Source: Botryllus schlosseri (taxonomy: Eukaryota). Taken from it: a DNA stretch of 64,000 nucleotides. Position numbers and translations under genes: made by a program. The notes under the pieces were generated by a model that did no database searches, was not told the DNA's origin, and worked only from the letters and a program-made list of their open reading frames with translations. Shown here one piece after another: positions 1,800-53,400 of this stretch (the stretch's first letter is position 1; every line of letters begins with the position of its first letter). The stretch covers positions 13,764,001 to 13,828,000 of the forward strand of contig CM119386.1 in assembly GCA_051294905.1 (NCBI GenBank), in the 5' to 3' direction.

Positions 1800-4678
1800 T
1801 GTCACGGCTACTCAACCCTCGGTGAGTTTTTGAGACGCGTGCACATCACCAATTCCGTGTGGCAAGAAGGCAGATTTCATTACGTAATGTGCCTGATTGA
1901 GCTGGTTGTCGGCGAAAAGTTTTATAGTCTCAGTGGGACCGCACGCAAAAACCTTTTCAACATTATTGGCACTCTAGTGGACAGAGGTAAGATTACTAGG
2001 TTGAATTAATGAAGGTCTGCATTGCAATAGCAGTATGAATGGAAGTATGGAAGTATGAAAATTATAAAGGTATGGATTTTTAATGTAATATTGGATTGTA
2101 TCCTTTAGTTTTAGATACAAAAGAGAGTATTCGGCAAATGAAGAAAATCGTCTACAGTGTTATGAAGTTGATGTTTATGTACAAAGTATCGTACATCGGT
2201 TCCAATCAAATTTGGTATGAAGAAATTGAAGTTGTGAGAACATGGATAAGAAAGTTGAAGCTTCTCAAGATTATTCCGGTAATATGTTTAAATCCCTTGA
2301 CTTGTCAGCCAAAAATATTCCGGTTTATGTCAATATCAATATACTATTCAGTTAAAAAAACGTTCTGAAATTCGAGCACCATTGGACCATGTCATGAAAA
2401 TATATTCATTGAAGTTTACATTTGAAAGTTGAATAGTATATTCATATTGAATTGAACCCGAATATTTTCGGCTGACACTCGTCAGGGGTAATCATCGGCA
2501 ACTAGTAGAGAATTCAAAAGCACATTGTATATCAACAATCGTATCACAAAATATGATATCACCAGCATGAAATTTTGAATACCAGAGCGCTCAATATACT
2601 ATTTTTAGATGTCTCGCTTCGTTGGGAGGGGCCGTTCACACTTTCATTTGTGTGTCTTCGAGTCGACTTTTATCAAAATACACCAGTCGAGGCTGTTCGG
2701 CAAGTGTCAGCCGAAAATATTCGGGTTCATTTCAATATGAACATACTATTCAATTGTATACTGAAGTCCTGTACCTCCAAGAAGCTCTTCATTTGAAAAG
2801 TTCTGAAATTCGAGCATCATGGGACCATGTCATGAAAATATATTTATTGTAGTTTGCAATTGAGAAGTAATTTGCATGTGGTAATGCTGTGGTTCATTTG
2901 GAAATGAAAAAAACGAAGATGTGCAGTAATTCAAATCATTCACAGGAAGCAAAATGCTACATTCTAAATTCGGTAGCCTATCCTGGATCAGGTCCTGATC
3001 TCTATAAAACCTGGTATTAAACTCTAATATGAGATCTCAGACTAATCTTTATCCTGTAAATATGTAATGCGCTGTACTCAGCTAACGTAAGATGTCTGTA
3101 ATTATTTCAGAGAGTTGACTTGAGCATAACGTTGACCGACATGCCGATTGAAGTGCAGAGAATTATCGTGCAGAGTCTCAATGATCATCGCGACCTCGAA
3201 AGCATGAGCCATGTCAACAAAATCTTCAAGGAACTGTGTAACGAGCCGGACGTTTGGAGAAATATGTGCCTACATCACTTTACAGAGGTTTGTTGCAATA
3301 GTTCTGAAATTGTATGAATAGAGCTGGTTGCTCCAGTGGGCCTACTGTAAATACAATTCCTTATTAAAACGAGGTAGTTTCTTATGAGATCAAGGCTTAT
3401 CTCTAGATGTTTGTTATGAAAGCATTTCTAAAATAGACCTATTTGACTGAAGTTGTGTAGGAACAGCGATTGCAAATCTGTTCAAGTCAAAACTTACCAA
3501 TCTTTTATCACATTTTCTTGACTGACTTATTCTAGAGACAAACCAACGGAGTGCAATGGTGGAATGAATACAGATTCAGTTCGATTTATTAACAATTTTT
3601 ATCAATTGAAAAACCACAAGATTGCGATAGAATTGAAAAGACAGGAAGGCGTCAAAACGACTTGGAGTAGTACTTGAAATCAGACCAGATCAGTACCACT
3701 TGAAATCAGACACCCACCTGGGCCTAGGCGATGTAAAGAGGCATGCACACTGAATGAAAAGTAAAAGAATGTAATATAAAAATAAGCGACAAAATGAGGT
3801 GGCAAATGAAGGCGAGAATGTAATGTTAGCTCGTGGCCCCTGGTAATCTTGAGGGCTGACTAGCAGTATTGTTGTGGCTTTCTGGGTGTAAAGATGATGG
3901 GTCATCTCATTGTATTTAAACATTAAAAACTTGACAAAACTGCAGAGGAAAATTGTCACCCATGCTGATGTAATTCGAAGATTGTAGAAGTGAATTGTAA
4001 AAAATGCATTACTTACATGGGATATTTTAGGTATCAGGGTATCTTTAGTGGTCTACGCTATGCGAAGAGTTTGTTTGAAATCCGTTACCGTGGTGGTTCA
4101 TGTTGAATCCTTTGTTGTTAGCAACAATTGGCCGAATGTGAAGAGGTTCTTGAACGGCGGAGGCGGAAGAGCTTGCTATCTGGAAGCAGTATTCATGACG
4201 TCACATGGAAAGTTAAATATCATTTCATGCTGAGGTTAGAGGACTGTTAGAGGACTGAAATATTTCTTGAACTTTTGGTCGTGGGAATGCAAACGTGCTG
4301 AGTAAATGGGTGATTGGTACTTGAATTATTATCATTATTGATGCTTCTGGCAATTTCGTATGTGTTGCCTGGGTTCTAACACATCTATATCTATATATGT
4401 ACTATTATTTTATAATCTTTTTTCTTCAAGGAGATACGAATTGAAGGAAGAATTCGCAGACCCTCTCATGCTTTGTCGGAAATGTCGCATATTGTTTTGG
4501 CAGGTCAGTAGCTCATTACTCAGTTTCAAAGCCATTTTGATATCGGAACAAGAACAACCATCCATAATCCTGCTTACAGGACTCGGGACACCCATGCGTG
4601 TCTGAAAATATGACGTCACTGTACGAAAAGATTCCCCCAAGGAAGTTGGTCTCGCTGTTTCAACTGCCTAATATCTAA
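1800..4678 (+). CDS. FBXO32: F-box only protein 32/25-like (atrogin-1/MAFbx family), 3' six coding exons; 5' exons not found in window
   Basis: Exons 1800-1986 (CHGYSTLGEF...RFHYVMCLIEL...SLSGTARKNLFNII), 2109-2278 (VLDTKESIRQMKK...), 3111-3287 (F-box LSITLTDMPIEVQRIIVQSLNDHRDL...VWRNMCLHHFTE), 4122-4234, 4431-4503 (RYELKEEFADPLMLCRKCRILFWQ), 4580-4678 (DSGHPCV...SLFQLPNI*). All GT-AG and phases match. Motifs recalled from atrogin-1 (HGYCTLGE, SLSGIAQKNF, LTLSDLP, LCKHCHILSWK, HPC). FBXO32 vs FBXO25 cannot be separated here. Confidence 0.92.
2425..2800. mobile_element. Hammerhead-bearing repeat family (Penelope-like/retrozyme-like, non-autonomous): head-to-head pair (- copy ~2425-2575, + copy ~2695-2800)
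   Basis: Shared consensus caattctctactagttgctgacgattacccctgacgagtgtcagccgaaaatattcgggttcatttcaatatgaatatactattcaattgtatattgaagttctg. Confidence 0.7.
2455..2490 (-). ncRNA. Minimal type I hammerhead ribozyme (intact core)
   Basis: Minus strand reads UACCC CUGACGA G UGUCAGC C GAAA AUAU UC GGGUU. Helix I is ACCC/GGGU; core CUGANGA and GAAA are present; there is a G10.1-C11.1 pair; helix III is the palindrome AAUAUU; the UC cleavage triplet end predicts a cut between 2460 and 2459. Confidence 0.75.
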
Positions 4679-5211
4679 GCACATATATTATATTGCACTT
4701 TCCTTTTTTAAAATTGTTATTTAATATGTTTTACTTGATTTTTCGCTGCTTAAGAGACTGCCTTCCTTGAATATGCCACCCACATTGGCGTTGATCAGAA
4801 CTTAGCTTGATAATGCAATGATGTAGTTGGATCATGAATCCTAAATTACATTGTCTGATATATTATGGTACAGCTGTGAGCGATTTCACCCGCATTTCTA
4901 ATATTGATGTTGATTTGTACTCAAATGTATGACATACTATGACAACATGCTTATGCGCTTTTCAAGGTATGCGTGGCTGGGATTAAATTCCCTGATTAAT
5001 GGCACCTTAATCATATGGGGAAGTTATTTGAGCTGTTGGCACTGTTTTTAAGGTTATTGATAACTGTGATTTCTCATAAGATAGTTCTGTGAACACTGAA
5101 GTTGATTGCTGTGTTAGATCTGATCTGAAAATTACTGGTCACTGTAAAATATTTCATTGCACTTTGTAAATAATCATGTTATCGAGTTTATCTTTACGTG
5201 TTTGGAGTTTT

Positions 5212-5217
5212 AATAAA
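5212..5217 (+). terminator. Candidate polyadenylation signal of the F-box gene
   Basis: First AATAAA I located after the stop at 4678, in AT-rich 3' sequence; unverified. Confidence 0.3.
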
Positions 5218-5526
5218 TTTTATGCATGCGAAGTTGTTCCGGTAGGCTACCGTTGTGAATTCCTTTGGCTATCAAATCGTGAGAGCCCGGCTAGCGTCTC
5301 GGGGATTACAGGTCTCCGACTCCGATATTTCAGGAGTATATTTGGGCTCATCCTCCCATGGGTCTCTGTTCCTACGGCGTCTCAGCAAAAATGCTCAGAA
5401 GCCAGTGAAGGGCATGTACAAAGAAGAAAGGCGTACAACAGAAATGATAACCAAACAACCAATATCAATATCGTCGAGTTATATTTTCATCTGAACAAGA
5501 CACACACACAGTGTACACTGTACAAT

Positions 5527-6424: not shown

Positions 6425-6489
6425 TGTACAATGCGACGCAATGAACAGATAAGAGGATGCCGAACGACGCGCAGTTGCGCTCTTTAGAC

Positions 6490-17400: not shown

Positions 17401-20400
17401 TTAGCAAACGCGAGTGACTTGGAGAAACGCAGACAGCTTCATAAAATTTTTGTACGGGTATGTATTTTTAAGCGTTTTGTCGCTTGTTTTTCTGGCAAGG
17501 AGTTTCCGCCCCCCATCGAACAGTTGTGATATGACCGTTAAAATCAGTACTGAAAAGAGCACAGATTCACAAGAGTAGGCCCGCAGCTATTTTGTTTCTT
17601 ATGATCTATCACACAGGAGTATCAGATATTGTATAAAGCCAATGATTATTCCATAAGTAGCTAAAATCACTAGGAGGCTTACAATATGTGTGTGAGTGTA
17701 ACAGCCCACTCTGTTTTGCTTTTCATATTTAATGTAGGTAGTTACTAATTTGATCAAATGTTCGTAAGCCAAGCTCCAAGCTATCTGTGAAACACGAGAC
17801 CCGACCATTTTTCTGCATTGCAGACATGCTATCATTTCACATGCAGCCTAACGTAAACACTTGGATGTAAGGCGCGCGAATAACATGTCGGCAAATTTTG
17901 TACACCACACTTGAAAAATTTGCGCTAATCCAATGACACTAAACGTAAGGATATGTGCAGTGAATAGAAAAAATGATAGTTTGAAAAAATGGAAATCATT
18001 GCACAATATAAACGCATCTGTTCCAGAGATGTTAACTTGACAAAGATGTGTTAGATACATGAACAACTTGGCATGTTTATCTGCATGCAAGTAACATCTA
18101 TTGTGCTACATTTCAGCTGATGCCAATCACACTGCTACTAGGTTGATTTGAACCCAACTATTTGTTATTCTTCAATCTGTGTCACCATGTAGCCTGCACT
18201 GCGTGGATATGATGAATCATAGATTTTGATTTGCAGACGTTAGTACGACTATGCAAGCACATGTCTCCATCTGAAGAATTGTCGCAGCGAGATGACTTAA
18301 ACCTGTTATTTTCCGCTGTCACTTCTTGGTGTCCGTCCCATAACGTGTCATGGCGGCAAGCGGCCGTCGAAGTACTCGGTGTCATTTCGAGGCACGGACT
18401 GAGCCACAATGTTGTGGAATATATACGAAGTGGGTATATTAAGTTAATATTTTATTTTCATGACAAATCTGATGTGTTGCTGGTCTTTTAAAATTGTGCG
18501 TGTCGTAATCACATTCTCTCCGCATTATGTAAAGAAAAATAGGCTGATCTGAAAAAATTATAACCCCCATTAACGTATTACCTGTCATTGCAGGCTTTAT
18601 CAAGAGAGCCAACTGAGTTGTTGTCTATTGCTGATGTACCTTAGGTCCATAGTTTTCTTGAGCAAATTGTTTGTGCCTCACAATTTCCAATATTTGCCGT
18701 AGCGATATTCCTGTTTATTACGGATCAGTCATGTTAGTCAGCCAAGAGCGAATAGTTTTGTCATTTGTCTTGTATCACGCTAAAAAGATTTATATAATAT
18801 AATACGTTGTTATCATTTTCAAAGAATCGCACATTGCAAACTAAGTCCAACAATTGCAAGGCGTTAATGTTACTTGTATTAGTAATGGCGGATGAACTTG
18901 ATGTGACTCAGCTTTTACTGCTCTCTTGAGTGTCTTTAAATTCCAATTTTAGTATAACAAAGTCCAATTTACTTCTTTGCTGGTAGTGGCCTCGCATGGC
19001 GAGACACTAAACAGCCATTATAGAGTGACGTTGTGATTCTAATTCTTCAAACCTTGTGGACGTGTGTTTGATTCCTCTGCTGTTATAAACGTTGGGCCCG
19101 TTGGATTTAGTTCAGTTAATGTCATAGAGCGTATTCTGATAAAATGTAAGTGCTTTTTAGGATGGTTCTGGCATTATGTTATCTTGAATTCTTTTGCTGT
19201 TGTGTTTTGTTCCAACTACCTCTGTAGAAGCAGCTCATTCGTGGTTACATGCTGATATTTTGCATAGGAGTGAATTCTTTCCTTGAAAATGTTTGCAATT
19301 TTCCAATGTCCATTTTTATCACGATTCTCTAAAACATTTTTTAAACCCCTTCCATGGCTGTAAACTTCATTGTGATTCGTCTCAACAAACTACTTGACAT
19401 GTTGTGGAAAAACGATATCAGGCAAGAGTGTCATCTTTAATTGTGTTTTACGGTGTAATTGAACTGTTGTCTGACTTGTTTTTGAGGCTCTACTCTGGAT
19501 TATCTACTTGAATAGGGTTTGCTAAATGACTAATTTGCCAGTTGTATGATAACGTAATGGTAACTTGTGCTTATGTGTGTTGTAAAAATTCAGTTTGAGC
19601 TATATATTTTAGTGCTGTGGTCAGTTTCCTGTTATTTGTATCTTCTCGATAAACCTTGGTTTCCTTTTTATATGATCGAATCGGCTGCGTTATTAGTTTC
19701 GCACATTGGACCCAGTTTCCGTCAGTCACCAATATGTCGCATACAGTTCCATAGGCCTATACTCGATTTCAGATTCAATTCAGATTTTTCCATTTCTGTT
19801 GTAGGCCTTCATTTCGTTGTGTTCAGCAGTAGCACGAGATATGAGGATCATCACATAATCTGATTTGTAGCACAATACCATTCCCACCGGCAGTCATTAT
19901 AGGCAATACTTCTACTGCATAAGGCTCGAGGGTTGATTAATATTAATACGCGTGAAGCAATTCTTGCATTGCTATCAAAGCAAAATCTTTTGATAAACAG
20001 TTTCACATTTTACATTCCTTGTTTCTTCATCTGCGATTGACTGATGTTCAAAGTATCTGCATGATAACTGATAAACAGTAAAGTTAGTTGCCAATCGGAC
20101 AATTTTTAAATACGTAAACTGCCATAATATAGGAATAATAGGATAGTTTTGCGGTTTAGTAAACAAATCTGATAAAAATTAAGGGTAATTTAGAGTTTTA
20201 AAAGAAATTTTCACATTTTTCACACATTTTCAGGTGCCTGCAATAATGAATGTATAATATATTGATACAGAAATAAAACCAAATATTTTCGGCTACACTT
20301 GTCACCGTTAACAGCAACTTGTATAGATTTATATAGAACATTGTATATCAATTGACTGACCCTGACTCCTTGGGGAGTGTCCGCCCAAAATATTCTGGTT

Positions 20401-23400
20401 GATTGTTGTTATATAATGTTATTTCTAATTCTCTACTAGTTGCTGACCTGACGAGTGTTGACTGTAAACAATCTGGTTTGTTTGAATATTAATACATTAT
20501 TTTATTGTATATTGAAGTTCTCTACCTCTCACAGTCTCTTCAATTAATTAATTAAATTATGTCTAGGATGAGAGTGAGTATCCAGGCCATTGGGTATCAT
20601 ACTTGTGTGTACTCTACCTATATTCATAAAAACCCGGATGTGCCACTTCACTGTAATCTAAGATAAATTCTGTGGTCAAGTTCGGTGCCTCACCCATCGC
20701 ATGTTTCCTACTGTGCTGTGCAATGACACCAACATTTCATCATTGCAGACAAGAAGTGCATAGCAGGTGCCGTCGACAATCTTCGGCGGTCCATGCTCAG
20801 CTCCATGAATACTCTCGTCGGAGAGCCTCTGACAACGGGAAATCCCGACAGCGAAATGAGCGAATTGGAACTCGTCCAAGGCTTGGTGTGTATTGTGAGA
20901 TTCATTCGCGACACGGCCGAAGTGACTCAGATGATACTGGACGATTTCAAACAATGCAACGGTTATGGATTTCTTATTGAATTTCTCTTGAGGTAATGTA
21001 CCGTGTGGTATGCATCAGTTTCATACCGACTGCTATCTGCATTATTGACGTTATGCATCGTTATTTTGAGTATGATGATGTAACCTTGTGGCCTGATCAA
21101 GTCCTGTAAAAAACCACAAAATTGATTTTGATTGTTCGGTTTCTTTTGTGGCAACTGCGACTTAACTGTTTGCTAGGCTCTCCGCCAAATGTCATTATGT
21201 TGTATTGTGGAAATCCAATTTAATTTATTTAAAAAGCTTGGATTTCATATATAGCAGGTCTTAAATGAGTGATGGCTACCTTTAAAAAACAATATGGTGC
21301 ACCACCATGCCGTGGCTTTGCGCGTTACAGCACCTTAACGGGGCAGATGAAAACACAATCATCATTCATTTGCGGTTAATAAGGCTAAATAACTGAAATA
21401 GGACGTAGCATATTTTTGTCCTTGAGGTTTTTGCGACATTTACATCGACTCATGATATACATACACACGATATCTGCTTATGCAAATCATAAGTGCATGA
21501 TGTGCACAAGGAAGGAAAAGTAAGATGCAGATATCGCCTTGTAAGGTTTTCCAAGTCTTGCATTGTACTGAATGTACTCCAGTATTGCTGAGCCATGGAC
21601 ACCGGTGTTACTAATCAGGTCTTTGGTCTGACCCGGCCGGGGATGGAACCCACGAGCTACCGATCAAGAAGCTGGACACTTCACCATTACGCTATCTTGT
21701 CGGCCAAGCTTGGCATGGCTCTGTATTACACAGCAGATGAATATATTTATACATACTTGGAGGTGATCAGTAACTTCCTCTTAAGGGGGGATACTCAATA
21801 TGTTTTGCCCACTTGTACTGTTTGCTCAGTTCGTTTTGTTTTGAGAATACTTACACTTCTACTCAGCAGTTTTTCCATCAAAACTACTTACTTTTTGTAC
21901 CCTGCAATTTAGAGAGTGACCAACTTAACTCGGCAAAATCTACTTTTGGAAACTACTTGAGTAGGCTACTTTCTAGATCTTCGTGCTCCACTTTCGCTGC
22001 TATTAGTTTTGACGTGTCTTTTTCTACTTCTACTTGTAATTGAGTAGAAATTGAAGACGTGACTGCTACTTTACTTCAGTAGCAACACTGGCTATTTTTA
22101 CCACCTCTGTTGGATTATCGAATCAGACCTTTAATGCATCGATAAGATTCCACTGCCTTTCCTGTAGCTATAAGCTCGACTGTGTTGTGCCGTGTCGTGA
22201 TCTCGTACAGATAGATTGGTTTTGAAATTCTCAATCACGGCAACTGTATGTAGGCTTTGATGACATGTTGAAACATGAGCTTACTCGGTGACTTAGCGTT
22301 ATTTTGTGCCATTTTCCACCTCATAAGCTTAGGTATGAGTCTAGTCATGACGCGATTTCCTGTTACAATCCCGCACCTATTTCCAGGCTAGAGCTGCTGG
22401 CCGAGGGCAGCGTTGTGCACCATGAAGCGACCAGGAGCATTGTCAGCAACTTGGAGATTTTGGCGACGTCGGGCTTTCTAGAACTGCCAGCCAGATCCGC
22501 GATACAAGCGTCACCGTTTCAAACTGAGTTTCGCGTGCCAAAGCCGATAGGGAAAGGTAGGGTTCAGATTTAAGAGTGTTTTGATATAGGAGTTTGTCAT
22601 TGAGAGCTTGTCTGCTATTACTGGAGTTTAACGTTCAACTTTCATGTAGTTTTTCACCTCGAATCATTACTTTCAGTCATCAGTTTATAATTAGTCTTTA
22701 TCTTCCTGATGGGCAGACTGGGACAACTAAAAAATTTTCAGCCTTTCTAAATTAAATTAGAATTATATTTGTATAGTTTTTTCCAATATACAGTAGCTAG
22801 AATTGTCTGGTTGTCCAAGTCTGCCGATGGGTGTGTGGATGTCGTTACAGTTTATGGTTAATGGAACCCTAAAAATGATTTATGCTTGCAACATGTGTAA
22901 TTGCTAACTAAAAGGTAGTCGTGTGTTTCTGATGACTGTAAATAAATGATTGGTACCTCTCAGATTTTGTGAATATTCGTCATAGGTTATACCATATAGT
23001 GTTAGTGTGGTTTGTAACATAGTCTGTGATAATCTGTTAATTATAGACCGCAGTATTGACCAACTGTATAATCGACAGCATTTGTAGCTGAACGTGAATG
23101 AAATTTCGGACATGAGTCTCTTGCAATAGTGTTCAGCTAGTGGGTCTGCACTGTAATAGATATTATACCAGTTATAGGCCTACTTTGATAACATAGTAGC
23201 AGGAGTCCTTCATGGGACATTCATCGCACAGACAGTAGGCACTAAAATATTGGAGGGGCATGGAGTAGGTGCTGATTTAGAGGCTATTCTCCTTCCCAGT
23301 GACCCAAAACAACCTAACTGAAGTATGAGTAGGCACACCATTAGTCGCAGCTCGAGAAGTACATCATTGGATTATTTTGAGTCGTCATTGTTCGAATGGT

Positions 23401-26400
23401 AGTCATTTGTTGGCTAGTAGATATCGATTTTATCCAACCACTGAACAGAATGAACACAATTCGCATTTCAGGTTTTGACAAAATTGCCTTAATGATTTCT
23501 TTTAAACTTTTTATACTCTATCTTTTATACTCGCTAGTTGTTATATGTTATCCCTCATTTCTTTCCATTCAGTGTGTATGCCTCTTATTTACATCACCTA
23601 GGCCCAGTTGGTTGTCTGATTTCAAAGACTACTCCAAGTCGTTTTGACGCCTTCCTATCTTTTCATTGTATCGCATTCTTAAGTTGTTTTGGATCGATGA
23701 AATTTTTATTAAACTGATACTGATACTTTTGAAGAGCTTTTTGACAGTACAGAACTTCAATATACAATTATAGTATATTCATATTGAAATGAACCTGAAT
23801 ATTTTAAGCTGACACTCGTCAGGGTTAATTGTCAGTAAGTAGTATAGAATTGGAAAGAACATTGCTGATGATAACCCCTGACGAGTTTCAGCCGAAAATA
23901 TTTGTAGGCTTCTCATTATGAATATACTATTCAATGATACAGTCTTATTTTGTAATAATTCAGTATTACTCTCGCCACTACACCAGGTTTGCGTCATGCA
24001 TTAGTGAGTGGAGATCGATGGTTGGTGGGATTATACTAAAACTGAAAATGCAACTTGACTGGAATTGGGTGATTTTCCATTTTGTTACATTTCAGGAGCG
24101 AGTGTTCGTAATGTGCAAGCCTTCCAAGTGTTGGAACAAGTATTCATAAGGGGACGTACGGTGATCCTCTGCGCCGGGGCTCTCGAAGGCATTCTGAACG
24201 TGTATCGGCGCGACCCAGCTAATTACTTCATACTAGCGGCGCAGCAGACGATTTCGGCATTCGCCGAGCCCTTGCTTGAAAAGAAGAGTTTGATATTTCC
24301 GAAATTTTTCGCGTTACTCGAGTACGTGGCGTTGGAGCTGTCGTACGTGCCGAGCAAGGAGCTCGTGAGTCTGTCGCTCATTCTGAAGGACGACAGGTGG
24401 GGCGTCTCTCATCTTGGTGATATTCGATCGTTGAATTTCAATGGCCCGTGTAAATCAGAATTGCGAGTGATTCATTAGGCCAAATTAATTATTTCTGGGA
24501 TTCCAAATCTCCTTTAGCACAGGAGCCTGAAGTTGCGCGGACCTCCCATATTGAACTTGGTTTGAGATAATATTTGAGTGGCCTAACTGCAAAATTTGGG
24601 AAGGTGATTACCAAAACAATGAAAGTCATCCATTTCGACCAGTCCTAATCTTGGTTTGATGACCTCATTGCCCGGAGCCATTTGGATTGCAATTATTGGT
24701 GTTTGTGTGTTGTCTGTGTGGCTATTGAGACCTTATGTGAACGATGGAAATGAGACAAAACATGGACATAAGAACATAAGGATGGATCTTATGAGGGCCA
24801 TGTAGGCAGTTTTACAGTTGTATTTTAAACATTGGCATTTCATGGATTCATCCCTGAATTAAGTTTTTAATAGGGTAAGTTTTTGTTGCACTAAAATCGT
24901 GAGAAAGTTGCCCATAACTTTACCAAAAGTTGCAGTGCACGGTTGCATTTACAATTTTTTAGAATTATTAGGCTATGAGATACTCGAAAGGTTCCACTGC
25001 ATAATCCAACAGTCGAAGATATGCAGTCGGTCTGCTTGTTCGTTAGTTTCTTCGCCATTCAATCGATCATGCATACATTTTTATGTTCATTAGGTTTGGA
25101 ACCTACATGACAGCAGCTCCTGCAGAGCTTTCGAATTTGGTACTGCCAAAAATTAGATGTAGAATAAGTTTTCGCATAGCGATAGCCATAGAACAAGTCC
25201 AAAACCTGCCTGTGGGGTCTATAGTATGTCAATACACGCCGTAAAGGGAGAGTCCGACTTACGGAGGTTTTACAACAGTTTTGTGGAAATTATTATGATG
25301 TAAAATACATTTATTTTCGTGAACCATCGTGTGCAATTTGAGATCTCAGACCCTGTAAGCTACAGTAACTGATCTGTAGAAACATATCACATTGTCAAAA
25401 TTTGCTTTCCCGCTGTACCATCTCATGCAGGGCAATGCAAGAAGCCACTTTTCATACGTGTTAATTCTACAATGCATAATTTCTTTTGAACACTTGGACC
25501 AAACTATCTTACTAAGCTTAGAATACAATATATATTTCGTGCATAACCGCAATTTACATGTCTTGGTCGGGATATTTCTAGGATGGTGACCAACATTAAT
25601 GTATGACGGGTGCATTTTTTCGAGGCTCTCAATGTCAACTATATCTTTTCGTGGTCAGGTCTCCATGGTGCAGCGTAGCATGCGTCGAAAGCCTTCGGAA
25701 AATCCTGTGCAGCAACCCGCAGATGTACAGGGATGTGTACCGCGAGGTTGGCATCCTGGAGGTTCTCGTGACGTGCCTTCATAAGTATGTAACATACTGA
25801 TATTAGTATGAGTAGCATTATACGCTTTTTACGCTGGCCTTGCCGGGTAGATATGCGGCGATTCTCAAGAGCTCGGACGAATTGGAAGATAACAGATCGA
25901 AACTAGGCCGTCTGTGCATGGACGTCCTCGCGGAATTGGTTAGAAACTGCCCGGCTAACGCAAGTGAGTACGGTATTGATTTCTTAATATGCTTCATGTC
26001 ATCACCTACCACATTTGAAGTCAATTTTTATTGAAATTTCTCAGATTTAATATAGCGCGTCTCAAAGTGGACCGTATTGACCATGGGGGCCATTTTGCGA
26101 GACAAGGGTGCCGTGGGAGGCAAAACTGTATGATGGGTGTGACAGGGTCGAAAATTTGCCCAATTGACTGTTTGGTTTCTTCTTAAGATGTATTTACAAT
26201 CCATGTGAGGAAGATCAAATCAGGGAAAATTGCTGTGCATTACGCCAACGTAACTTTTTTATGAATTCGACATGTAGTCGAACACTTTTCGCTGGGCGTT
26301 ATCAAGTGTGTAAAAATCAGAATCGAAAAGCTGTTGAAGTAAAAGTAGCACACCATCCAAACATACTTGAGTGGAGAAAGTTGGGTACTGCTGAAAAGCA

Positions 26401-41400: not shown

Positions 41401-44400
41401 GATCACTTATGATACAAGGCACCCAAAAAGTCTCGTAGTTATAATGAATGTATTCTTGCAATCGATATTGTGATGAGAGCAATTTGGTCTGTGGCGAAAT
41501 CCTGCTATATAGACATATATGTCAAGCTAGTTTTCTCTTTCAGCTCATCAATTGATTGTTTCAGGCTTTGGCGATGCATTTGAGACGGAAAAGGCACTTG
41601 CTCAACTCTCACGTTCTGCATCTCGCGTATTCGCTAGCCGGCACTGTAGACGCAGGACGCGAATCGGCGTTCATTCCAAACGTGACGGCTTTCGAAGATC
41701 TGCTCTGCGATCTTGAGGTGATTTTTAGTTTTCTCTACTATCTTGTTATATTGGGAAGTAATTTGAAACAACGCGATTGGCGTTAAATGGCAATGATAAC
41801 TCGCTCTGAATGAGTTAATACAGCACCTTTTCCAAATCATGTACCACGCCCCACCTCCGACAACACCCAGACGTTGTAAATGTAATCTCCAGGTTGAATA
41901 GCTACTAATAACTTGTTTTCTAGAAGTCTGCTCTAGCAGAGCAGATCATATCAGCGGGTTCGTTGGTGTTCGTCATACCTGGCTCACAGCAAGTTGATTT
42001 GGAGTGAAAAACTAATACCCCACTTCAATTATGTATTCATATCCAGTATCGACGGTGCCCCAGTGCGCCATTAACTACCTTTGCTAGATAGGATATGTAT
42101 TTCAAGTGACCCTTCCCGTTACAGAACTTCAATATACAATTGAATAATATATTCATATTGAAATCAACTGGTCAGATATATACAAAGTTGTATTCCATTA
42201 TCTACTAATTGCTGACGATTACCCCTTATGAGTATCATATTATTCAATTATATATTGAAGTTCTGTACATACAAGAGTCTCTTTTAAAACTCTAGAGCTT
42301 TTGATATTATTGCAATCTTCTCTTTGCACCAAGAAAGTCCACGGAATACTCAACTTATATATTGGCGACTTGAATTAATGTATTTTGCTGATAACATTCT
42401 TTTCAGTTGTTTGCTTTGGTGACATTTTATTTTTTTAAACAGGTGTGGCACAACGCTCCCGACGAATTGCACAAGTCTCTCCTCGAACACATTTATGAGC
42501 TACTGACTGAGTCCAGGTATGGATTACCCATTGTGTAGTTGCTTCTCGCCTCCATTATAATTTTCTACCTTTGCAGCGACACCGGTGCTAATTGCTTGAT
42601 CATCAACGAACGAGATATGGTGAAGCGTTGCCTGCATTTTTTACTCGCTGACGCATCGCTGTCGTACGGCACCGTACAAATTGTGTTTCGAATATTGGAG
42701 GTCCTTCTGAAATGTCCCGGAAACAATTCCAACTTACTGAGGTGAGACGGCTGTGTAAATCGCCATATGATATGACGCTAATCTGTCGTTCAGAGTGACA
42801 AAACTAATGAGAATTGTTATGATATTATTATTGGTGTGCATAGAGCGATACTGAACGCGTTTTTCTGTTGCACATATTGAAATCCAACGCATGACAAGTA
42901 TATTTTGCTGGAAATAACTTTCATCTCGGGTTACCGACCGATGAAGGTCAAAGCAAACAATTTAAAAATCATCTCTTTGGGTAATTTTGGGCTAAAGCTG
43001 GCAGTTATAGATGCTAGCACTTACGAATGATTACTGGTGAAGCTTTGAGCTTCCGATAATATGAAGAATATCTGACACGTAAACCTTGCGCTATTTGGCA
43101 GGTTCGGACAGTTTCTCGTCATGTTGCTGCCTCCCGTCAACCAAAGCGAGAAGCAATTAAAGTTAGACAACGCCGACATTGCAAGCGATTTCAAGACGTC
43201 TAATTCTACCGGAGGTAAGGAGTATTTTTATACAAATCCGAAGGTAACGAAACGAATTTGATTTCAGCGGAATACTATTTTTTCTGTTATGGTGATAGTG
43301 AGAAGTAAAGTTGAATCTGAAAAAATCATCAGTATCTGGGATCCTGACTCTGTTTTGTTTGGTTGAGTGTAAACTGCGAATGGCCTTCATTCCACTTACA
43401 GAAACTGTCCGATTATCTTCGAAGCCTGTGTGTGCGCGTAACATCCGTATCAGAAACATGGGCTTGAGCCTGCTGCGCCAGGGTCTTCATGACGGCAACA
43501 CAGGAGAGCCCGACACAAGGTTCGTTTCTCAACGGTAAACTTAGATGTAGTTTACGTTTGAATCTCTGCTTACACTTGTAACTGATGAAGGGTATTCGAG
43601 TTGAATTAATTATATTCAAATTAATGTAGTCTTGAGGGCACTATTCAATTATAAGTAGAAGTAACTAATTTTAACTAAATTTATGACCGTGGGTTGATTC
43701 AGTAATAGAGAAATTTCATGTACTCGACTGAATAATAGTTCATAATATATATGTTAATGACAAACATACGTACGTTGTACATGGACGAACGTTACGGTAA
43801 TATAAAGGTAACCCGAGTGGCGAGTAATACCGTATTTCTTTGTTTCAGCTTTTGCGACGAGCTTCAATATACCTTGGGTTGGGATTGGATGCTGCTCTTT
43901 CTCAACGAATACGTCCACGACTCTACCATTGTCGAGGCCACTCTACTGCTGCTGGAAGCTTTGAGGTTTGCGCTTGGAATTTTCAAATTTTGTTTTTTCT
44001 GTGTGTGTTCTAGTCAGACTTTGACAAAGAGATAGTTCTAAGTATACGTCAGTGATCTAATTTGTGAAATGCTTCTATATACTGTAATTTTAATTCTAAA
44101 TAATAATTTCATCATTTCAAAACACCACAAGACTGCAAGACTGTGATACAATAATGGACTTGGAGTAGTCTTGGCAATAAGACACCCAACCGGGCTTATG
44201 TAATGTAAATAAGAGGGCATGCACTCCGATTTGACATGAACTAAACTTGGTTCTTGTTGCATTTCTTTCAATTCTGGAATTTTAATTCAATAATTTTAAT
44301 TATAATCAAATTTGGAAAAAAACTGTAGCTATCATTCTAATTCTAATCTAAATTAGAAAAGATGTAAATTTTCTAGTTCCTTCAACTGTGGTTCAGGTGC

Positions 44401-47400
44401 GGTTCCTCCGGCACTAAGAGCTCTCACACGTACTCTGTGTCGACCGGGTCGCTGTCCGCTGCTGCGCTGTCAACCCCGGCATCAATCGTAGCAGCGGGTA
44501 TTGGCGCATCAAACTCTACTGCCCCGACACACAGCTCGGCGTACGAACGGTTTAAGCACGGGGAATTGTTTGGCGGTTGGCTGGCCGGGACGGAGGCTAT
44601 CTTGAAGAACATGGAGGAATCTTTGCTCGGTAAGTCAGTGTTGTGATTGGGATATGGGATGAGCTGGGGCTTATTGAATTCTTCTCATGATGAGTGTCAG
44701 TGGGACGCTTCCATCATTGCCGACTACGCTAGTATTGGAAATTAGTGTCCCGGCCCATATTTACTGCAAAGGGGGCCGAATAATTGGTTGGTGGCTTTGA
44801 ACTCAAATATAAGGTTGGGTTGTCAGTACCTGGGAATGAAAATGAGAATAAGATTTTAGTTGGCGTCAAAATCGAGTCGGAGACAAGAACCCCTCTCCCT
44901 TTATAGATATGCTCAGTGGCTTTGTTTTGGAAGTCATATATTCCGTTCGAACTCTGGCCGCAGATTCGGTAAGCGGAAGCGTCCCGCAGGGTTGTAACCA
45001 AGTCACAAGGCTCCGAGTCGCGAGTCAATCTCACTTTCATCGTTTCGACTCGAGTCAAGTCGAGTCATTTTCAATTCACCACCGAGTCAAGTCCAAGTCA
45101 GTGAGGAGAGGGTTGAGTCCGAGTCACGGTGTTATGACTCGAGTCTGAGTCCAAGTCATTGCGTTGACAGCTCAGTTTCCAGTTAAAGTCTTGTTAAACC
45201 CACTTTTTATGTCACTTTGGTGATATCGAATTGCTCGCATTTATAAGATACTGATTTTCCTCAATTATATTGTCAAATGAATTGTATTGTCTGCTAAGTC
45301 TGCTTAGCGTTCGCGTATTGTTGGATATAGGCTGCTTCTAAACAGTTTGGAACAAGACTTGCAGCATTGTGATGTAGGATGAGTTGAAAGTAAATCGCAA
45401 ACTCTACATTCAGAAAGCGTTCTAAACTACTAAAGTCTTCAATGTCTTGCACTTTCCGATTGCGAATAACATTGAAATATATCGAGCAGTCTGGCTGGAA
45501 AGCTGACGTTGACCGGCGGCTGAGAAGCACTGATCTAGAGCAATTAAATAATTATTGCAAATTTTTTCTGTATTTAAACCTCCTATTTCTTGCACGCCCT
45601 GATTTGTATCTTGAGATACATTAACTTATCCTGTGTTCAGGCTTCAACGTAGGCTCCGGCGAGGACATGGAATATCACCGACAGGTTTTTCGCGACGCGT
45701 GCCCCGGACCCGGTTTCCAGTTGTTGACTTACAACTTGCTGCGGCACATGGACTCGCCCCGGTTGTATATCGCGTTGCTACAGTTTGCCGTGTCTGACAA
45801 GATGACGGAGCCACCGCCCACGGACAAGGTGAGGCTTTGATTTCAAAGTGTAAAGCTAGCGATTTCTAGAGATGCCCTACGTAACTGAGAACGAGAAGTG
45901 TATATTAAAAAATGTCATGCGATCATGCCAAGTAAAGTGAAGGCCCGTAATCTAGTTGTAATGTTTACTGTAGAGTTGCCATAACCACCTTTCATTACCT
46001 TCTCACATATTAAAGAATCATTTCTCACTCTTTGACTCAAATCATTACAAATATTTGGTGATGCGATTGTTGATATGCGATGTTCTTTTCAATTCTCTAC
46101 TAGTTGCTGACCATTACCCCTGACGTCGGAAATATTCGGGTTTATTTCAATATCGACATAATAATCAATTGTATATTGAAGTTCTGCACCTCCAAGATGC
46201 TCATTGCAATAATCGATTTGCATTTGTGCACTTCAATCATTGTGCCCAACCAAAAAAAATTACTTTGATTGTGTTTAAATCCCATTACAGGACCATAAAC
46301 AATGGTCCATATCCATAATTACTTGCCTACATGGTACCAACGGCAGTGTCATGTAAATTTCAACCCTCTCAAAGAGCACTCCGACCCAATGACATATTAT
46401 TAATGTCTGAAAATGCGTCGAAAAACATCATTTGATGACAAACTTTTCAAGTCAAGATTCAAGTCACAACTTTGTCATGCAGTGTAAACTATACCGAATA
46501 AAGTAAATTTAAGTAGTCTGCTATGTGACTATGTCAGTTGTGTTTTGTAGATCGATCTGGACACGATGTACGAACTGATATTCGGTCACAACGCCTCTTC
46601 AGGGCCGACCAGCCCTAGAAGCAAACTGAAGACGAGCGTCAGTTTCAGCGGTCCTAGCATATCCCCCCAAAACAACACGGCCATGTGTGTGGAAGTGTTT
46701 CAAGTCATTCTGTCGATGGTCCGCAGTATGATAAACAAGGTAAGAGAATTTGTGTTGCCGTCCCAGCCATTGCTAGCTCAGATTCATCAGTACTAACTGT
46801 GGCGTAGCCAGGAGCGAGTTTTTTTGGGTCCGAACCCGTCTTATTTCAAACTTGTTCTGATGTCGATGTTGAAAACCAATCCAATTTCGATCACACATGA
46901 TTGTTGATATGCAATGTTCTTCCCAATTCTCTACTTATGCATGCCACCATTATATGTACAGGACTGGATGAAGGAGTCCAGCAAGCATTGGATTCAGACG
47001 TACCCCATCGTCATGCTGCAGACGTTCATATTTATCTATCAGTTCGACTATAACAGCCTGGCGTCAGCGTTTGTGACTCCGGACTTTCTCTCCTATCTCT
47101 GCTCCACTGTCTTTCCGCGGCAGGAAGATGATGATTTTTACGTAAGTCTGTTAGGGCATTGGCATTTTTACGTTTGCATTCTCGGACAATATTATCATTG
47201 CCGGGGCTGGGTTATCATGGTCATGAGGTGACTCCCAAAATTTTTTAAACGTAACCTATGTGGAAACTCCACTGAGAGAGACTTTCGTCGTGAAATAAAT
47301 CAAATCTCAAATGCAATTTAAAGCACTTTCGACAGGCATTGAATGCAACCGGATATAGCCTATGTCACAAGTTCAGATTCGGACGCCTAGAAATTTTTAC

Positions 47401-50400: not shown

Positions 50401-53400
50401 TGCAAGTCTGTAGTATATCCAATCAATTGAATCATATATTCATATTGAAATAAGCCCGAATATTGTCGGCTGACACTCGTCAGGGGTAATCGTCAGCAAC
50501 TAGTAGAGAATTGAAAAGAACTTCGTATATCAACAATCGTGACAAGGGCAGTTATGTTTTATTACAATTATTTTCCATTTATTCATGTTTTTTATGTTCT
50601 TTATTACACTATACAGAGAGTTGATCTTCGAAAACAGACGACACGACCAGCTGTTTCTCAGCGGACTCTGCCATTGCCTATTCATGCTTGCAAGTGACAG
50701 GTATGTATATTGCCATACCACCGTAATAACAAGTTACGGTAGATGCCTCGCAATTTCAGTGACGGCGTTGGATTCGGAGTGGAAGATGAGCCAAGGCAAA
50801 CCACGTGGCATGTCAATATCGGCAGCCATGATTCAGAGAGCGCAGCAGTCAAGAACAAAGGTTGTTAATTTGATGTCACTTTTAGCACGACTTAGTCAAT
50901 TTTATCTTTTTTCATCAGCGAAAGCCTATTTATTTTGTAATTAATGGGGAGGTGTAGATTAATGCAGAGACAGAACAGTGTGTGCACACTGCACAGTTAA
51001 CTTCGCGCTTACCAATGATAACTGACGGGAATTGCTAATTTTATGTTGTCTGCCACCATATAATGATGGGTTATGGAATATGGGCTAATCATTTGAGGCT
51101 CAAGTTTTGGTAACCGTCCATATTTTGAAATAAACCCCTTCGGCATACCGGAAACTTCTCGTGATCTTGTGCAGAGTGTGTCTTTTGCATTTTGTTATGC
51201 TATGCTCAACTATATTCTTAGCTGAAGGATTATTTCTGCGTGTTGCAGCATGCCACCTTTTTATGAGTCGAGTTTTTGACAAGCCTGCAACTGCATAGGT
51301 ATATTTGGTGGTACGGTTGTTGATGCACAATGTTCTTTCCAATTCTGTAGTTGCTGCTGACGATTACCCCTGACGAGTGTCAGCCGAATATATTCGGGTT
51401 CATTTTAATATGAATATATAATATTTATTTGTGTATTGAAGCTGCGTATCTCCAAGAAGCTCTGCATTGGTGTTTTGCGCAGGTAACTCACCTGAGAACC
51501 TACCAGGACAACCTGTGTCACCACAGGAAAAAGGGAAGCTTCTACTTTCCAAAGCCGCGGCTAGAGTTTGGACGGAATTGATGACTTCCAAAAAGCAAGC
51601 TATAGAAGATATTTATAAAGTGAGTGTAACTTCTACTAGTCCGCGATTTGATTTCAAATTAATTGCCACCTAAAATCTTAAATCTGTTATTGGAAAGATA
51701 TTTTCCCTATTGTAAAGCGTCGGTAGAATTGATGCGATGCCCCGTGTTACATTTTCAGGTGCAGTTTTACGATTTGGGCTCGAGTCAATCCACTCTGGAT
51801 TCGGCTAGGACGAAAGTGAAGGAGGTGGCTGGCAAAATGTGGTCCGGATATTTGGCTTTGGAGAAAAAGGGACAGGCCGGTACCAAGGAAATTGTGAACA
51901 TCAGCGTAAGTAGCATTGTTACGGATAAAATTCATTGCTGTTCCGATTGTAGTTGTGACTCGAGTCAAGTCGAGTCTTTTTCAATTCACCACCGAGTCAA
52001 GTCCGAGTCCAAGTCAACTAGTAGACGGTCGATTCCGAGACATAGTGTTGTGACTCCAGTTCAAGTCATTATGTTCACTGTTCAGTTAAGTCCGGTTCAA
52101 CCCACTTTTTTCAATTCGACTCGAGTGATATAGAATAGCTCACATTCATAATATAGTAATTTTCATCGATCTTTGCAGTTTCTGACCCCTTTTTCCAAGT
52201 ATCAGGACTGATAGACTAAATACCAATAATGTGGTAACTTTATTGTTCTTCGAAGTTACAATGGAATGTATGTCTTGGCCGATGGCCGTCCTAGTCTCGA
52301 GTCATACGACTTGGTTCGAGTCATACACAATGACTTGAGTACAAGTCGAGTCAATATAACAATTGACTCAAGTTGAGTCATTTTACGCATTCGAAAAAAT
52401 GTCTCGCGTAAAGTCGAGTCAACAAAAAATTGCGAATCGAGTCGGACTCGAGTTGGGTCATGACTGAGTCATTACAACCCTCGCTCTGGTATAACCGGAG
52501 GTGATCAAAGTAGCCAGCTTTGCTACATGAGTAGAAGTGGGGTAATGCCGTCAACCTTTACTCAAAATACAAGTAGAAATAGCTTTTCCAAGACATGTCT
52601 AATCTATTTAAAGTGAAGGTTGAAAATCAATGGTCTTGAAAGTATTTGAGTCAGCTTTGGTCGAGAGTTTCATACCTTGCCACGTTAATCAGAGATGGCT
52701 AATTAGGCTATTTTTCGAAATGAAAGACGTATCTTCGTGGCAATGCAGAATGTCTAATTACCCACAAATAAGGCGAAATCTCCGAAAATATATTCAATTA
52801 CCGTGCTGCAAGAGTCATTTCACGCTGTTCTCTGGACAATTTCATTCGTAAAAGCAATGCAAACTTGTACCAAAACTACTTTTTGCTTTTCAAAATCCAA
52901 ATTTAAAAAAGTAAGTAGTTTTGCTTGAAGACTGTGATCCAAGTAAGTATTCTAGGCCTAGTTTTAACTGAGAACCAGGAATAGTCTACAATTGTTAACG
53001 CTTGAGTATTTTGTGTACTTGCATACTGACCGTTTCTGTATATACCTCGATATTCTCTTGCTATAGGACCTATACAGATAGAAAGTGATCATCATCCGCT
53101 TCCTATCCATTGCTGTTCTTCCTAGCAGGCTTACATCGGTTATATTTTTTACCGCAGAAACTAGCAAAAAAGGTGACGAGTCTCGCGTTAATGGGAGCCA
53201 GCAGAAAGTCGCGGAAGGATATCACGAGCAAAGCCAACAAGCAGTTTTCAATACAGGTAGGTCATCATTAGCTGCTGTGTTCGGGCGACTTGTAATAACC
53301 TTTTTGTATATTTTGCACTGTGCAATCGTGCGTAGAAGAGTCTGAAACCGCTTATTATGCTCTGATTTCAGTTTACATGGAAGATATTCATATTATACCG

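What the first reader, a model, noticed from the sequence alone, without database searches (positions are those of the whole stretch)
2455..2490. Intact minimal hammerhead ribozyme in an intronic repeat: a Penelope/retrozyme-like mobile RNA family
Seen: the minus strand reads UACCC-CUGACGA-G-UGUCAGC-C-GAAA-AUAU-UC-GGGUU. Every hammerhead core element is in type I order: helix I ACCC/GGGU, CUGANGA, G10.1-C11.1, GAAA, A15.1-U16.1 and a UC cleavage site. Helix III is only the palindrome AAUAUU. Known: minimal type I hammerheads with a palindromic helix III occur in Penelope-like elements and animal retrozymes, where they cleave as dimers. Inference: the ~150-200-bp repeat around it, with at least 9 loci in this window and no ORF, is a non-autonomous ribozyme-bearing retroelement family, possibly making self-processed or circular RNAs. 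Caveat: helix II is a single pair, and CUGAC/GUCAG can form a competing hairpin that sequesters the core.
Basis: partly seen in the sequence, partly recalled or inferred. Interest (0 to 1): 0.85.

Follow-up and report, generated by a model that had tools for sequence, protein, structure and literature searches.

The report
Penelope retrotransposon hammerhead, pseudoknotted variant
The motif is real. It is the small self-cleaving hammerhead RNA motif in the tail of a dead, truncated copy of a very abundant Penelope-like retrotransposon, which is a known pairing, but here the second helix is formed by pairing with a box just upstream instead of by a hairpin.

Summary
Every hammerhead core position is present, and the predicted cut lies between 2460 and 2459.

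It is not a non-autonomous family. All of about 16 fragments in the window align to the last ~100-180 bp of an autonomous Penelope-like element (PLE). [quoted passage not shown] It forms tandem arrays and head-to-head pairs, and shows steep 5' truncation and two classes of 3' end (the PLE "tail"). The 34-nt motif occurs 3,093 times exactly in the 495-Mb genome.

PLE relatives from other organisms (47-64% protein identity) carry the same motif just upstream of their ATG. Across about 8 lineages, helix I covaries, helix III stays palindromic, the C3-G8 core pair varies as C-G, U-G and U-A, and a 6-bp pseudoknot between loop II and an upstream box changes on both sides at all six pairs. The competing two-hairpin fold shows no covariation. 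More distant PLEs have the ordinary hairpin helix II at the same position.

The window copy is a relic, and its upstream box is mutated. RNA-seq shows read-through transcripts but no ends at the cut site. Earlier notes of this scan reached the same reading on other DNA of this genome.

The parts
2429..2611 (-). 5'-truncated PLE insertion: last ~20 nt of the ORF, the 3' UTR, the hammerhead, and ~30 nt after the cut. It has the short type of 3' end, without the tail.
   Evidence: blastn to the full unit (unit 2546-2728, 91% identity) and to the 3' reference.
2494..2499 (-). Upstream box, the 5' strand of the pseudoknot helix II. It reads GCCGAU here and GCUGAC in the family, which gives one mismatch and one wobble against loop II.
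2486..2489 (-). Helix I 5' strand, ACCC.
   Evidence: Covariation with the 3' strand across relatives.
2479..2485 (-). Catalytic box CUGACGA (C3-A9).
   Evidence: U4, G5, A6 and A9 are invariant in 22 relatives, and C3/G8 vary as C-G, U-G and U-A.
2470..2478 (-). G10.1 (2478), a one-nucleotide linker (2477), the loop II strand GUCAGC (2476-2471) that pairs with the upstream box, and C11.1 (2470).
   Evidence: All six pseudoknot pairs change on both sides and 96% of cells are paired.
2461..2469 (-). G12 A13 A14, then the 6-nt palindrome AAUAUU (A15.1 to U16.1), which is a helix III that can form only between two copies.
   Evidence: Relatives have AAGCUU, AACGUU, AAAAUUUU and AAAGCUUU.
2459..2460 (-). 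Predicted cleavage site, C17 (2460) | G1.1 (2459).
   Evidence: Position in the motif. No read ends at the matching site of the family.
2456..2459 (-). Helix I 3' strand, GGGU.
2443..2445 (-). Remnant of the PLE ORF start codon, 14 nt after the cut.
   Evidence: Compared with the full unit, L044 ATG at 2165.
2619..2685 (+). PLE ORF fragment in the opposite orientation, head to head with the copy above.
   Evidence: unit 2445-2511, 85% identity.
2703..2791 (+). PLE fragment from the middle of the hammerhead to the end of the tail. It forms the 51-nt inverted repeat with 2429-2479.
   Evidence: 95.5% identity.
2303..2348 (+). Older fragment of the same region, with a decayed core.
20254..20549 (.). 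An older (-) fragment at 20254-20351, a short (+) piece at 20375-20404 and a (+) fragment at 20401-20549 (78-87% identity), with broken cores.
23728..23935 (.). Head-to-head pair, (-) 23728-23864 and (+) 23862-23935, with mutations in or next to the core.
42120..42283 (.). Three short fragments of the family.
46051..46202 (+). Truncated copy with an 8-nt deletion inside the hammerhead.
50424..50540 (-). Truncated copy with an A13-to-C change in the core.
51301..51466 (+). Truncated copy with tail, and an A15.1-to-U change.
53401..53577 (+). Older truncated copy (78% identity) with several core changes.
58938..59101 (.). Head-to-head pair of old fragments (74-78% identity).

Best explanation
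Window 2455-2490 (-) is the hammerhead motif of a dead, 5'-truncated insertion of a very abundant autonomous Penelope-like element. In the intact element the motif lies ~105 nt after the ORF stop of one unit and 14 nt before the ATG of the next, that is, in the pseudo-LTR. It is a minimal type I hammerhead with a 4-bp helix I, the full catalytic core, and a helix III reduced to a 6-nt palindrome that can pair only between two copies (a dimer). Its stem II is a single G10.1-C11.1 pair. The six loop nucleotides pair with a box 4 nt upstream of helix I, and one linker nucleotide spans that 6-bp helix. Shown here: the element's identity, the position of the motif, and selection for this fold across PLE lineages. 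Inferred: in transcripts of tandem or pLTR-flanked elements the ribozyme cuts just upstream of the ORF, probably as a dimer and perhaps helped by the element's own protein. Also inferred: reverse transcription starts at either of two sites (about 25-30 or 65-75 nt) downstream of the cut site of the 3' copy, so each new insertion carries the motif, with or without the tail beyond it. Solo truncated copies such as this one are neutral relics.
For: The sequence is as reported. Homology among genomic copies has a shared 3' end and variable 5' ends. The full unit is 2,692 bp in a tandem array, with the motif between ORFs. The ORF hits RVT_1 at E=7.8e-9, above the Pfam cut-off. GIY-YIG residues are visible, the Pfam hit is weak, and Y727/Y737/G739/R748/H752 are invariant in 22 proteins. 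There are at least 4 copies with 860-aa open frames and many head-to-head pairs. Exact genome counts are 3,093 for the 34-nt motif and 1,826 for the 57-nt stretch from box to ATG, with reversed controls at 0. All window copies map to the unit's 3' end. Relatives found by protein alone carry the same architecture next to their ATG. On the 22-sequence alignment 91% of cells pair, against 31-43% when the partners are slid, and 0 of 500 shuffles reach the observed value. All six pseudoknot pairs and 3 of 4 helix I pairs change on both sides, and C3-G8 appears as CG 9, UG 11 and UA 2. The two-hairpin alternative equals its shuffles. More distant PLEs have a hairpin helix II at the same position. 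Insertion ends fall at two places. This matches the tail and the two reverse-transcription start sites reported in PMC11167929. Hammerheads in PLE pLTRs are described in PMC4209133. Pseudoknots between loop II and the stem I region, and stems II of 1-2 bp, are described in PMC3088659.
Against: No cleavage was measured. In about 1.9 billion letters of bulk RNA-seq and 1.3 billion of single-cell RNA-seq, no place on the stretch showed an excess of read starts or ends, although depth over the motif was 400-1,400. Nearly all of those reads come from solo copies inside host transcripts. Rfam hammerhead models give no hit, but they also miss a canonical PLE min-hammerhead, so this says little. In this family the nested minimum-energy fold is the inactive two-hairpin form. 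The 22 sequences represent only about 8 independent lineages, and they were picked with a core pattern that fixed G10.1, C11.1 and the boxes. The window copy itself has a damaged upstream box.
Confidence: 0.8

Rival explanations
1. The fold is conserved, but it no longer works as a ribozyme. On this view it is a protein-binding or template-recognition structure for the PLE reverse transcriptase or nuclease, or a 5' UTR element for translation, that keeps a hammerhead-like shape.
For: Metazoan PLE min-hammerheads cleave poorly in vitro (PMC4209133). In the anole PLE, catalytic mutants insert normally and cleavage needs the protein (PMC11167929). No read ends were found at the cut site here. The motif lies 14 nt from the ATG and ~25-70 nt from the insertion ends.
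Against: Every catalytic nucleotide is kept across lineages. The C3-G8 pair, which matters for the active site, varies only among pairing combinations (CG, UG, UA). A mere binding site would not need U4, G5, A6, A9, G12-A14 and a non-G at position 17 all together.
Confidence: 0.15
2. One reading: a non-autonomous, ORF-less, retrozyme-like family of ~150-200 bp that spreads on its own and makes self-processed or circular RNAs.
For: Short copies vastly outnumber long ones. Contig depth over the motif is ~1,600 times that over the 5' end of the ORF. Starts of the window copies cluster within ~60 nt after the ORF stop. Animal retrozymes are proposed to derive from PLE pLTRs (bioRxiv 10.64898/2026.07.22.740005, abstract only).
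Against: Copies are collinear with the autonomous element, and their 5' ends are graded rather than fixed. No short tandem arrays of the unit were seen. The only back-joints are at the 2,692-nt unit, and tandem DNA arrays explain those. 97% of bulk RNA-seq reads run into unrelated flanks.
Confidence: 0.04
3. A chance match, or the end of a DNA transposon: the inverted repeats around 2303-2791 would be MITE terminal repeats, and the two small palindromes (CTGAC..GTCAG and CCGAA..TTCGG) would be the real features.
For: Inverted repeats of 48-51 nt are present. The two hairpins make up the predicted minimum-energy fold. Loose core patterns are not enriched in the window.
Against: The inverted repeats are head-to-head PLE fragments. 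The two hairpins show no covariation, while the hammerhead fold does.
Confidence: 0.01

Closest known systems
Minimal hammerheads (min-HHR) in the pLTRs of metazoan Penelope-like elements (Cervera & De la Pena 2014, PMC4209133; Lunse et al. 2017, not held in the library)
   Same: Type I order, a 4-5-bp helix I, G10.1-C11.1, and a helix III reduced to a palindrome that implies dimers. The location is the pLTR of an element with reverse transcriptase and GIY-YIG nuclease. There are thousands of solo copies from truncated elements, opposite-strand pairs 100-700 bp apart, and a U3-A8 core variant in some lineages.
   Different: Published metazoan PLE motifs have a 6-8-bp hairpin helix II with one unpaired nucleotide before it. 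Here the hairpin is one pair, and the helix is made with a box upstream of helix I. The motif would escape their descriptor, and Rfam misses it.
Hammerheads stabilised by a pseudoknot between loop II and the stem I region (Perreault et al. 2011, PMC3088659)
   Same: A 5-6-bp Watson-Crick pseudoknot holds stems I and II side by side. Stem II can be 2 bp, or even 1 bp. In that work, breaking the pseudoknot lowered activity more than 100-fold.
   Different: Those examples are mostly bacterial or metagenomic type II hammerheads, plus a human intronic one with a normal helix III. They were not described as PLE-borne dimeric min-hammerheads.
Poseidon PLE of Anolis carolinensis, PAc (Frangieh et al. 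2024, PMC11167929)
   Same: The hammerhead lies at the ORF start. Genomic insertions have two 3' end classes (the tail), explained there by two internal reverse-transcription start sites. No RNA-seq ends were seen at the cut site.
   Different: In PAc the ORF begins inside the motif and the cut is 26 nt after the ATG, whereas here the cut is 14 nt before it. As described, PAc has a regular stem II and loop II.
Non-circularly permuted hammerheads, types SGC and CSG (Eckert & Weinberg 2023, PMC10085705)
   Same: A hammerhead core whose helices can only be drawn with crossing lines. Stems I and II are joined by a short linker of about 3 nt.
   Different: There whole blocks are reordered. Here the block order is the classic type I, and only the 5' strand of helix II (beyond G10.1) has moved upstream.
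Animal non-LTR retrozymes
   Same: Type I hammerheads related to PLE pLTRs.
   Different: Retrozymes are short tandem, ORF-less units that give circular RNAs. The copies here are truncated pieces of the autonomous element.

Membership tests
Hammerhead ribozyme, type I | Core boxes C3-U4-G5-A6-N7-G8-A9 and G12-A13-A14 in type I order | tested here: met
   (2485-2479 and 2469-2467). U4, G5, A6, A9 and GAAA are invariant in 22 relatives, but the search pattern fixed them.
Hammerhead ribozyme, type I | A15.1-U16.1 pair followed by a non-G at position 17 | tested here: met
   A2466, U2461 and C2460. Relatives have C, U or A at position 17.
Hammerhead ribozyme, type I | Helix I supported by compensatory changes | tested here: met
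   ACCC/GGGU here. Relatives have CGCUA/UAGCG, CAUCA/UGAUG, AUACU/AGUAU and UACUU/AAGUA. 3 of 4 pairs change on both sides.
Hammerhead ribozyme, type I | Helix II as a local hairpin starting with G10.1-C11.1 | tested here: not met
   Only G10.1-C11.1 can form locally. In its place is a 6-bp pairing of loop II with an upstream box, in which all 6 pairs covary and 96% of cells are paired.
Hammerhead ribozyme, type I | C3-G8 tertiary pair | tested here: met
   CG in 9 sequences, UG in 11, UA in 2, and no non-pairing combination.
Hammerhead ribozyme, type I | Site-specific self-cleavage | tested here: inconclusive
   No excess of read starts or ends at the predicted site in two raw RNA runs. The reads come mostly from solo copies, and ordinary RNA-seq is a weak test. 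No biochemistry was possible.
Hammerhead ribozyme, type I | Match to Rfam hammerhead covariance models | tested here: not met
   No hit at gathering score, or at E<=10 on 201 nt. As a control, a canonical PLE min-hammerhead (L064) is also missed, so the test lacks power.
Penelope-like element (endonuclease-bearing, C-terminal GIY-YIG) | Single ORF with a reverse transcriptase domain | tested here: met
   RVT_1 at E=7.8e-9, 36 bits against a cut-off of 29.6. 843 homologues carry PF00078/PF28514/PF26215.
Penelope-like element (endonuclease-bearing, C-terminal GIY-YIG) | C-terminal GIY-YIG nuclease preceded by Cys/His residues | tested here: met
   The Pfam GIY-YIG hit is below cut-off (E=0.023). 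The residues are visible and invariant in 22 proteins. PF01541 is on record for relatives P0012 and P0087.
Penelope-like element (endonuclease-bearing, C-terminal GIY-YIG) | Tandem or partial-tandem copies (pLTRs), head-to-head inverted copies, 5' truncation | tested here: met
   Four units spaced 2,692 bp apart. Many minus/plus pairs. A graded 5' extent. The head-to-head pair in the window.
Penelope-like element (endonuclease-bearing, C-terminal GIY-YIG) | Optional 30-40-bp 3' tail | tested here: met
   Insertion ends cluster at unit positions about 2173-2184 and 2215-2226 of L044, roughly 40-45 nt apart.
Retrozyme (non-autonomous, circular-RNA forming) | Own ORF-less unit bounded by hammerheads, in short tandem repeats, giving circular RNA | tested here: not met
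   Copies are collinear with the PLE 3' end and have graded 5' ends. The only back-joints are at the 2,692-nt unit, which exists as tandem DNA.
MITE / DNA transposon with terminal inverted repeats | Terminal inverted repeats bounding a unit | tested here: not met
   The inverted repeats are opposed PLE fragments.

The most novel reading that the evidence does not exclude
One clade of Penelope-like elements has replaced the hairpin helix II of its hammerhead with a pseudoknot to a box upstream of helix I. In several lineages that box is a near-copy of the catalytic CUGAYGA box. Loop II can then pair either with the box (active fold) or with the core itself (inactive two-hairpin fold). That would be a built-in conformational switch, set by dimerisation or by the element's protein, which decides when the retrotransposon RNA is cut.
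Probability: 0.15. Interest if true: 0.6.

Novelty: new variant of a known kind. Interest (0 to 1): 0.4.

Why it matters
Hammerheads in Penelope-like elements are established, so the finding as stated is mostly a correct recognition of a known pairing. Three things are added. First, the short repeat is not a separate ribozyme-bearing family but the truncated tail of an autonomous, probably recently active PLE with thousands of identical motifs. Second, this PLE clade builds helix II as a covarying pseudoknot. Published descriptors for PLE hammerheads and the Rfam models do not capture that form, so such motifs are likely under-counted in animal genomes. Third, the clade offers a natural series for testing what the ribozyme does for the element: box and loop variants, C3-G8 variants, and different palindromes.

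Tried and rejected
- **Rfam.** Scans at gathering score over the whole window, and at E<=10 over 201 nt, gave no hammerhead hit. The control on a canonical PLE min-hammerhead also gave none, so this is not evidence against.
- **Loose core pattern.** A loose IUPAC core pattern in the window was no more frequent than in shuffles.
- **MITE reading.** Reading the inverted repeats as MITE ends was rejected once the full unit was mapped.
- **Two-hairpin fold.** It is the thermodynamic minimum for this family but shows no covariation.
- **Alternative register.** Using the upstream CUGAYGA-like box as the catalytic box was rejected by inspection, because it gives no G10.1-C11.1 pair and no helix I partner.
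- **RNA-seq test for cleavage ends.** No signal, and not decisive.
- **Literature access.** Lunse et al. 2017 (PMC5785218) is not held, and the supplement of Cervera 2014 is not held. I therefore could not check whether a pseudoknotted PLE variant is drawn there.
- One translation call used a wrong frame and was corrected.
- **Not done.** The host organism was not identified and 'intronic' was not checked.
Full report
**Observation.**
- Helix I is ACCC/GGGU and the catalytic box is CUGACGA.
- G10.1 (2478) and C11.1 (2470) enclose seven nucleotides.
- GAAA is followed by the palindrome AAUAUU (counting A15.1 and U16.1), then C17 at 2460 and G1.1 at 2459.
- A loose core pattern is no more common in the window than in shuffles (22 against 20.6).
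- Rfam gives no hammerhead hit at gathering score, or at E<=10 on 201 nt.
- Rfam equally misses a canonical Penelope min-hammerhead taken from a relative, so its silence is not evidence against.

**What the repeat is.**
- blastn of the region against the window finds many copies, and also inverted repeats around 2303-2791.
- The 132-nt piece around the motif has at least 1,716 candidates in the 495-Mb genome, and the best are 94-96% identical.
- Flank comparison shows a shared 3' end and 5' ends that fall away gradually, which is the signature of 5' truncation.
- One longer copy has an ORF with GIY-YIG residues directly upstream.
- That ORF has at least 5,989 candidates, open frames of up to 860 aa, many minus/plus pairs, and a tandem array with 2,692-bp spacing.
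- In the array (locus L044) each unit carries an 848-aa ORF from ATG 2165 to the stop at 4711.
- The ORF hits RVT_1 above the Pfam cut-off.
- The motif sits ~105 nt after the stop of one ORF, and its predicted cut is 14 nt before the ATG of the next.
- Together these features make it a Penelope-like element (PLE) with the hammerhead in its pseudo-LTR, as described in PMC4209133 and PMC8557442.

**The window copies.** About 16 fragments at 12 or more places map to the last 100-180 bp of the unit.
- The copy holding the finding spans 2429-2611 (-).
- It meets an oppositely oriented ORF fragment at 2619-2685 (+), followed by 2703-2791 (+). This is the head-to-head arrangement typical of PLE insertions, and it explains the "terminal inverted repeats".
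- Only the copy at 2455-2490 keeps the core and helix I intact. The others carry core substitutions or deletions, as expected for neutral decay.
- The 3' ends of copies fall into two classes about 40-45 nt apart. Loose ends in reads and contigs lie at the same two places.
- This matches the PLE "tail" and the two internal reverse-transcription start sites shown for the anole element (PMC11167929).
- Genome-wide, the 34-nt motif occurs 3,093 times exactly, and the 57-nt stretch from box to ATG 1,826 times. Reversed controls give 0.

**Is it a real hammerhead?** Copies within one young family say nothing about selection, so I collected relatives by protein alone.
- The ORF has 843 homologues. 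Four contigs fetched by protein identity (55-64%) all carry the same architecture next to their ATG.
- A protein-profile scan of metagenome contigs gave 80 more loci. 27 of them, together with the four contigs, make 31 loci with the motif; the lowest protein identity among them is 47%.
- The box:loop pairs are GCUGAC:GUCAGC (this genome), UCUGAC:GUCAGA, ACUAAC:GUUAGU, UCUAGC:GCUAGA, UCCAGU:GCUGGA, UCCGAC:GUCGGA, UGACGC:GCGUCA and GCAUU:AAUGC.
- On the 22-sequence alignment, the hammerhead-plus-pseudoknot structure has 91% of cells paired, against 31-43% when the partners are slid by 1-3 columns.
- No shuffle out of 500 reaches the observed pairing or covariation score.
- All six pseudoknot pairs, and three of four helix I pairs, change on both sides.
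- C3-G8 appears as CG (9), UG (11) and UA (2), and never as a non-pair. The U3-A8 form was reported for a Schistosoma PLE (PMC4209133).
- Helix III is always a palindrome: AAUAUU, AAGCUU, AACGUU, AAAAUUUU or AAAGCUUU. This fits pairing between two copies rather than a hairpin.
- Caveats: the set holds only about 8 independent lineages, and the selection pattern fixed the boxes, G10.1 and C11.1.

**Geometry (inference from textbook pseudoknot stereochemistry).**
- The 3' strand runs continuously from the loop strand into C11.1.
- G10.1 is followed by one linker nucleotide that has to span a 6-bp helix across its deep groove. This is the standard solution in H-type pseudoknots.
- The box ends 3-4 nt before the distal end of helix I. 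That fits the side-by-side arrangement of stems I and II in active hammerheads.
- The near-constant sizes (6 bp, 1 nt, 3-4 nt) across lineages agree with such a constraint.

**Relation to what is known.**
- More distant PLEs in the same search (34-40% protein identity) have the published form: one unpaired nucleotide, a 6-bp hairpin helix II, a 4-bp helix I and ACGU. For three of them (L064, L108, L111) it lies at the same position relative to the ORF.
- The pseudoknot form is therefore a clade-specific variant.
- Pseudoknots linking loop II with the stem I region, and stems II of two pairs or even one, are documented for other hammerheads, where breaking the pseudoknot lowers activity more than 100-fold (PMC3088659).
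- The non-circular permutations of PMC10085705 reorder whole blocks and are a different thing.
- I could not read Lunse et al. 2017, which surveys ~150,000 PLE-linked variants, so prior description of this form cannot be excluded.

**Function.** For PLE hammerheads the proposed role is to process transcripts of tandem or pLTR-flanked elements (PMC4209133). In the anole element the ribozyme needs the element's protein and is dispensable for insertion in vitro (PMC11167929). The read-laying results here are:
- Bulk and single-cell RNA reads cover the 3' UTR and motif at depth 200-1,400 in both orientations, but the ORF body only at 0-5.
- 97% of the bulk-run reads continue into unrelated sequence.
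- No position shows an excess of read starts or ends.
- The RNA seen is therefore read-through of solo relics inside host transcripts. Cleavage there is undetectable, which is expected if two copies, or the protein, are needed.
- Joints that "go back 2,692" match the tandem DNA arrays and need no circular RNA.

**Verdict.**
It is wrong about a non-autonomous, retrozyme-like family.
- The window copy is a relic whose upstream box (GCCGAU at 2499-2494) has lost one pair.
- The family-level motif is a genuine hammerhead under selection, with a pseudoknot in place of hairpin helix II: a new variant of a known kind.
- The same reading was reached earlier in this scan on other DNA of this genome (notes s1-231978, s1-229058, s1-236790). 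I tested it independently here with relatives from other organisms.

Noticed in passing
L044 (G000:C16:20950500-20960499), units at 2132-4711 and 4824-7403: A tandem array of at least four 2,692-bp PLE units, two of them with uninterrupted 859-aa open frames. Other 860-aa frames occur on C1 and C4. With 1,826 identical 57-nt motifs, the family looks recently active.
   Followed up: partly
L044 2173-2184 and 2215-2226; window copies listed: Insertions end at two discrete places about 40-45 nt apart, both inside the 5' end of the ORF. This matches the PLE tail and the two reverse-transcription start sites reported for the anole element.
   Followed up: partly
L055, L057, L060 and about 15 similar loci; L045, L058: Relatives carry the core box as UUGAAGA (U3 with G8) or as UUGAUAA / UUGACAA (U3 with A8). 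This forms a wobble-mediated path of covariation inside the catalytic core.
   Followed up: partly
L064:2566, L108:1423, L111:830: More distant PLEs (34-40% protein identity) have the textbook PLE min-hammerhead with a 6-bp hairpin helix II at the same position. Rfam does not detect it either.
   Followed up: yes
L044:2020-4711, depth table: Summed contig depth in run X1 rises from about 70-110 over the 5' part of the ORF to about 162,000 over the motif. This implies that well over 99% of copies are severely 5'-truncated.
   Followed up: no
G000:C1:9279348/9279420, 22181638/22181761, 23274492/23274600, 30467163/30467242: Many exact motifs lie as minus/plus pairs only 70-125 bp apart, which are very short head-to-head double insertions. 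A transcript through such a pair would fold into a long hairpin.
   Followed up: no
window 2358-2425 and 2796-2863: A 68-nt direct repeat (90% identity) follows two of the PLE fragments and is not part of the PLE unit. It may be another repeat, or a duplicated target.
   Followed up: no
window 59338-60779: Another note of this scan places the window inside the largest intron of a WDFY3 orthologue. That would make the 'intronic' label plausible, but it was not checked here.
   Followed up: no
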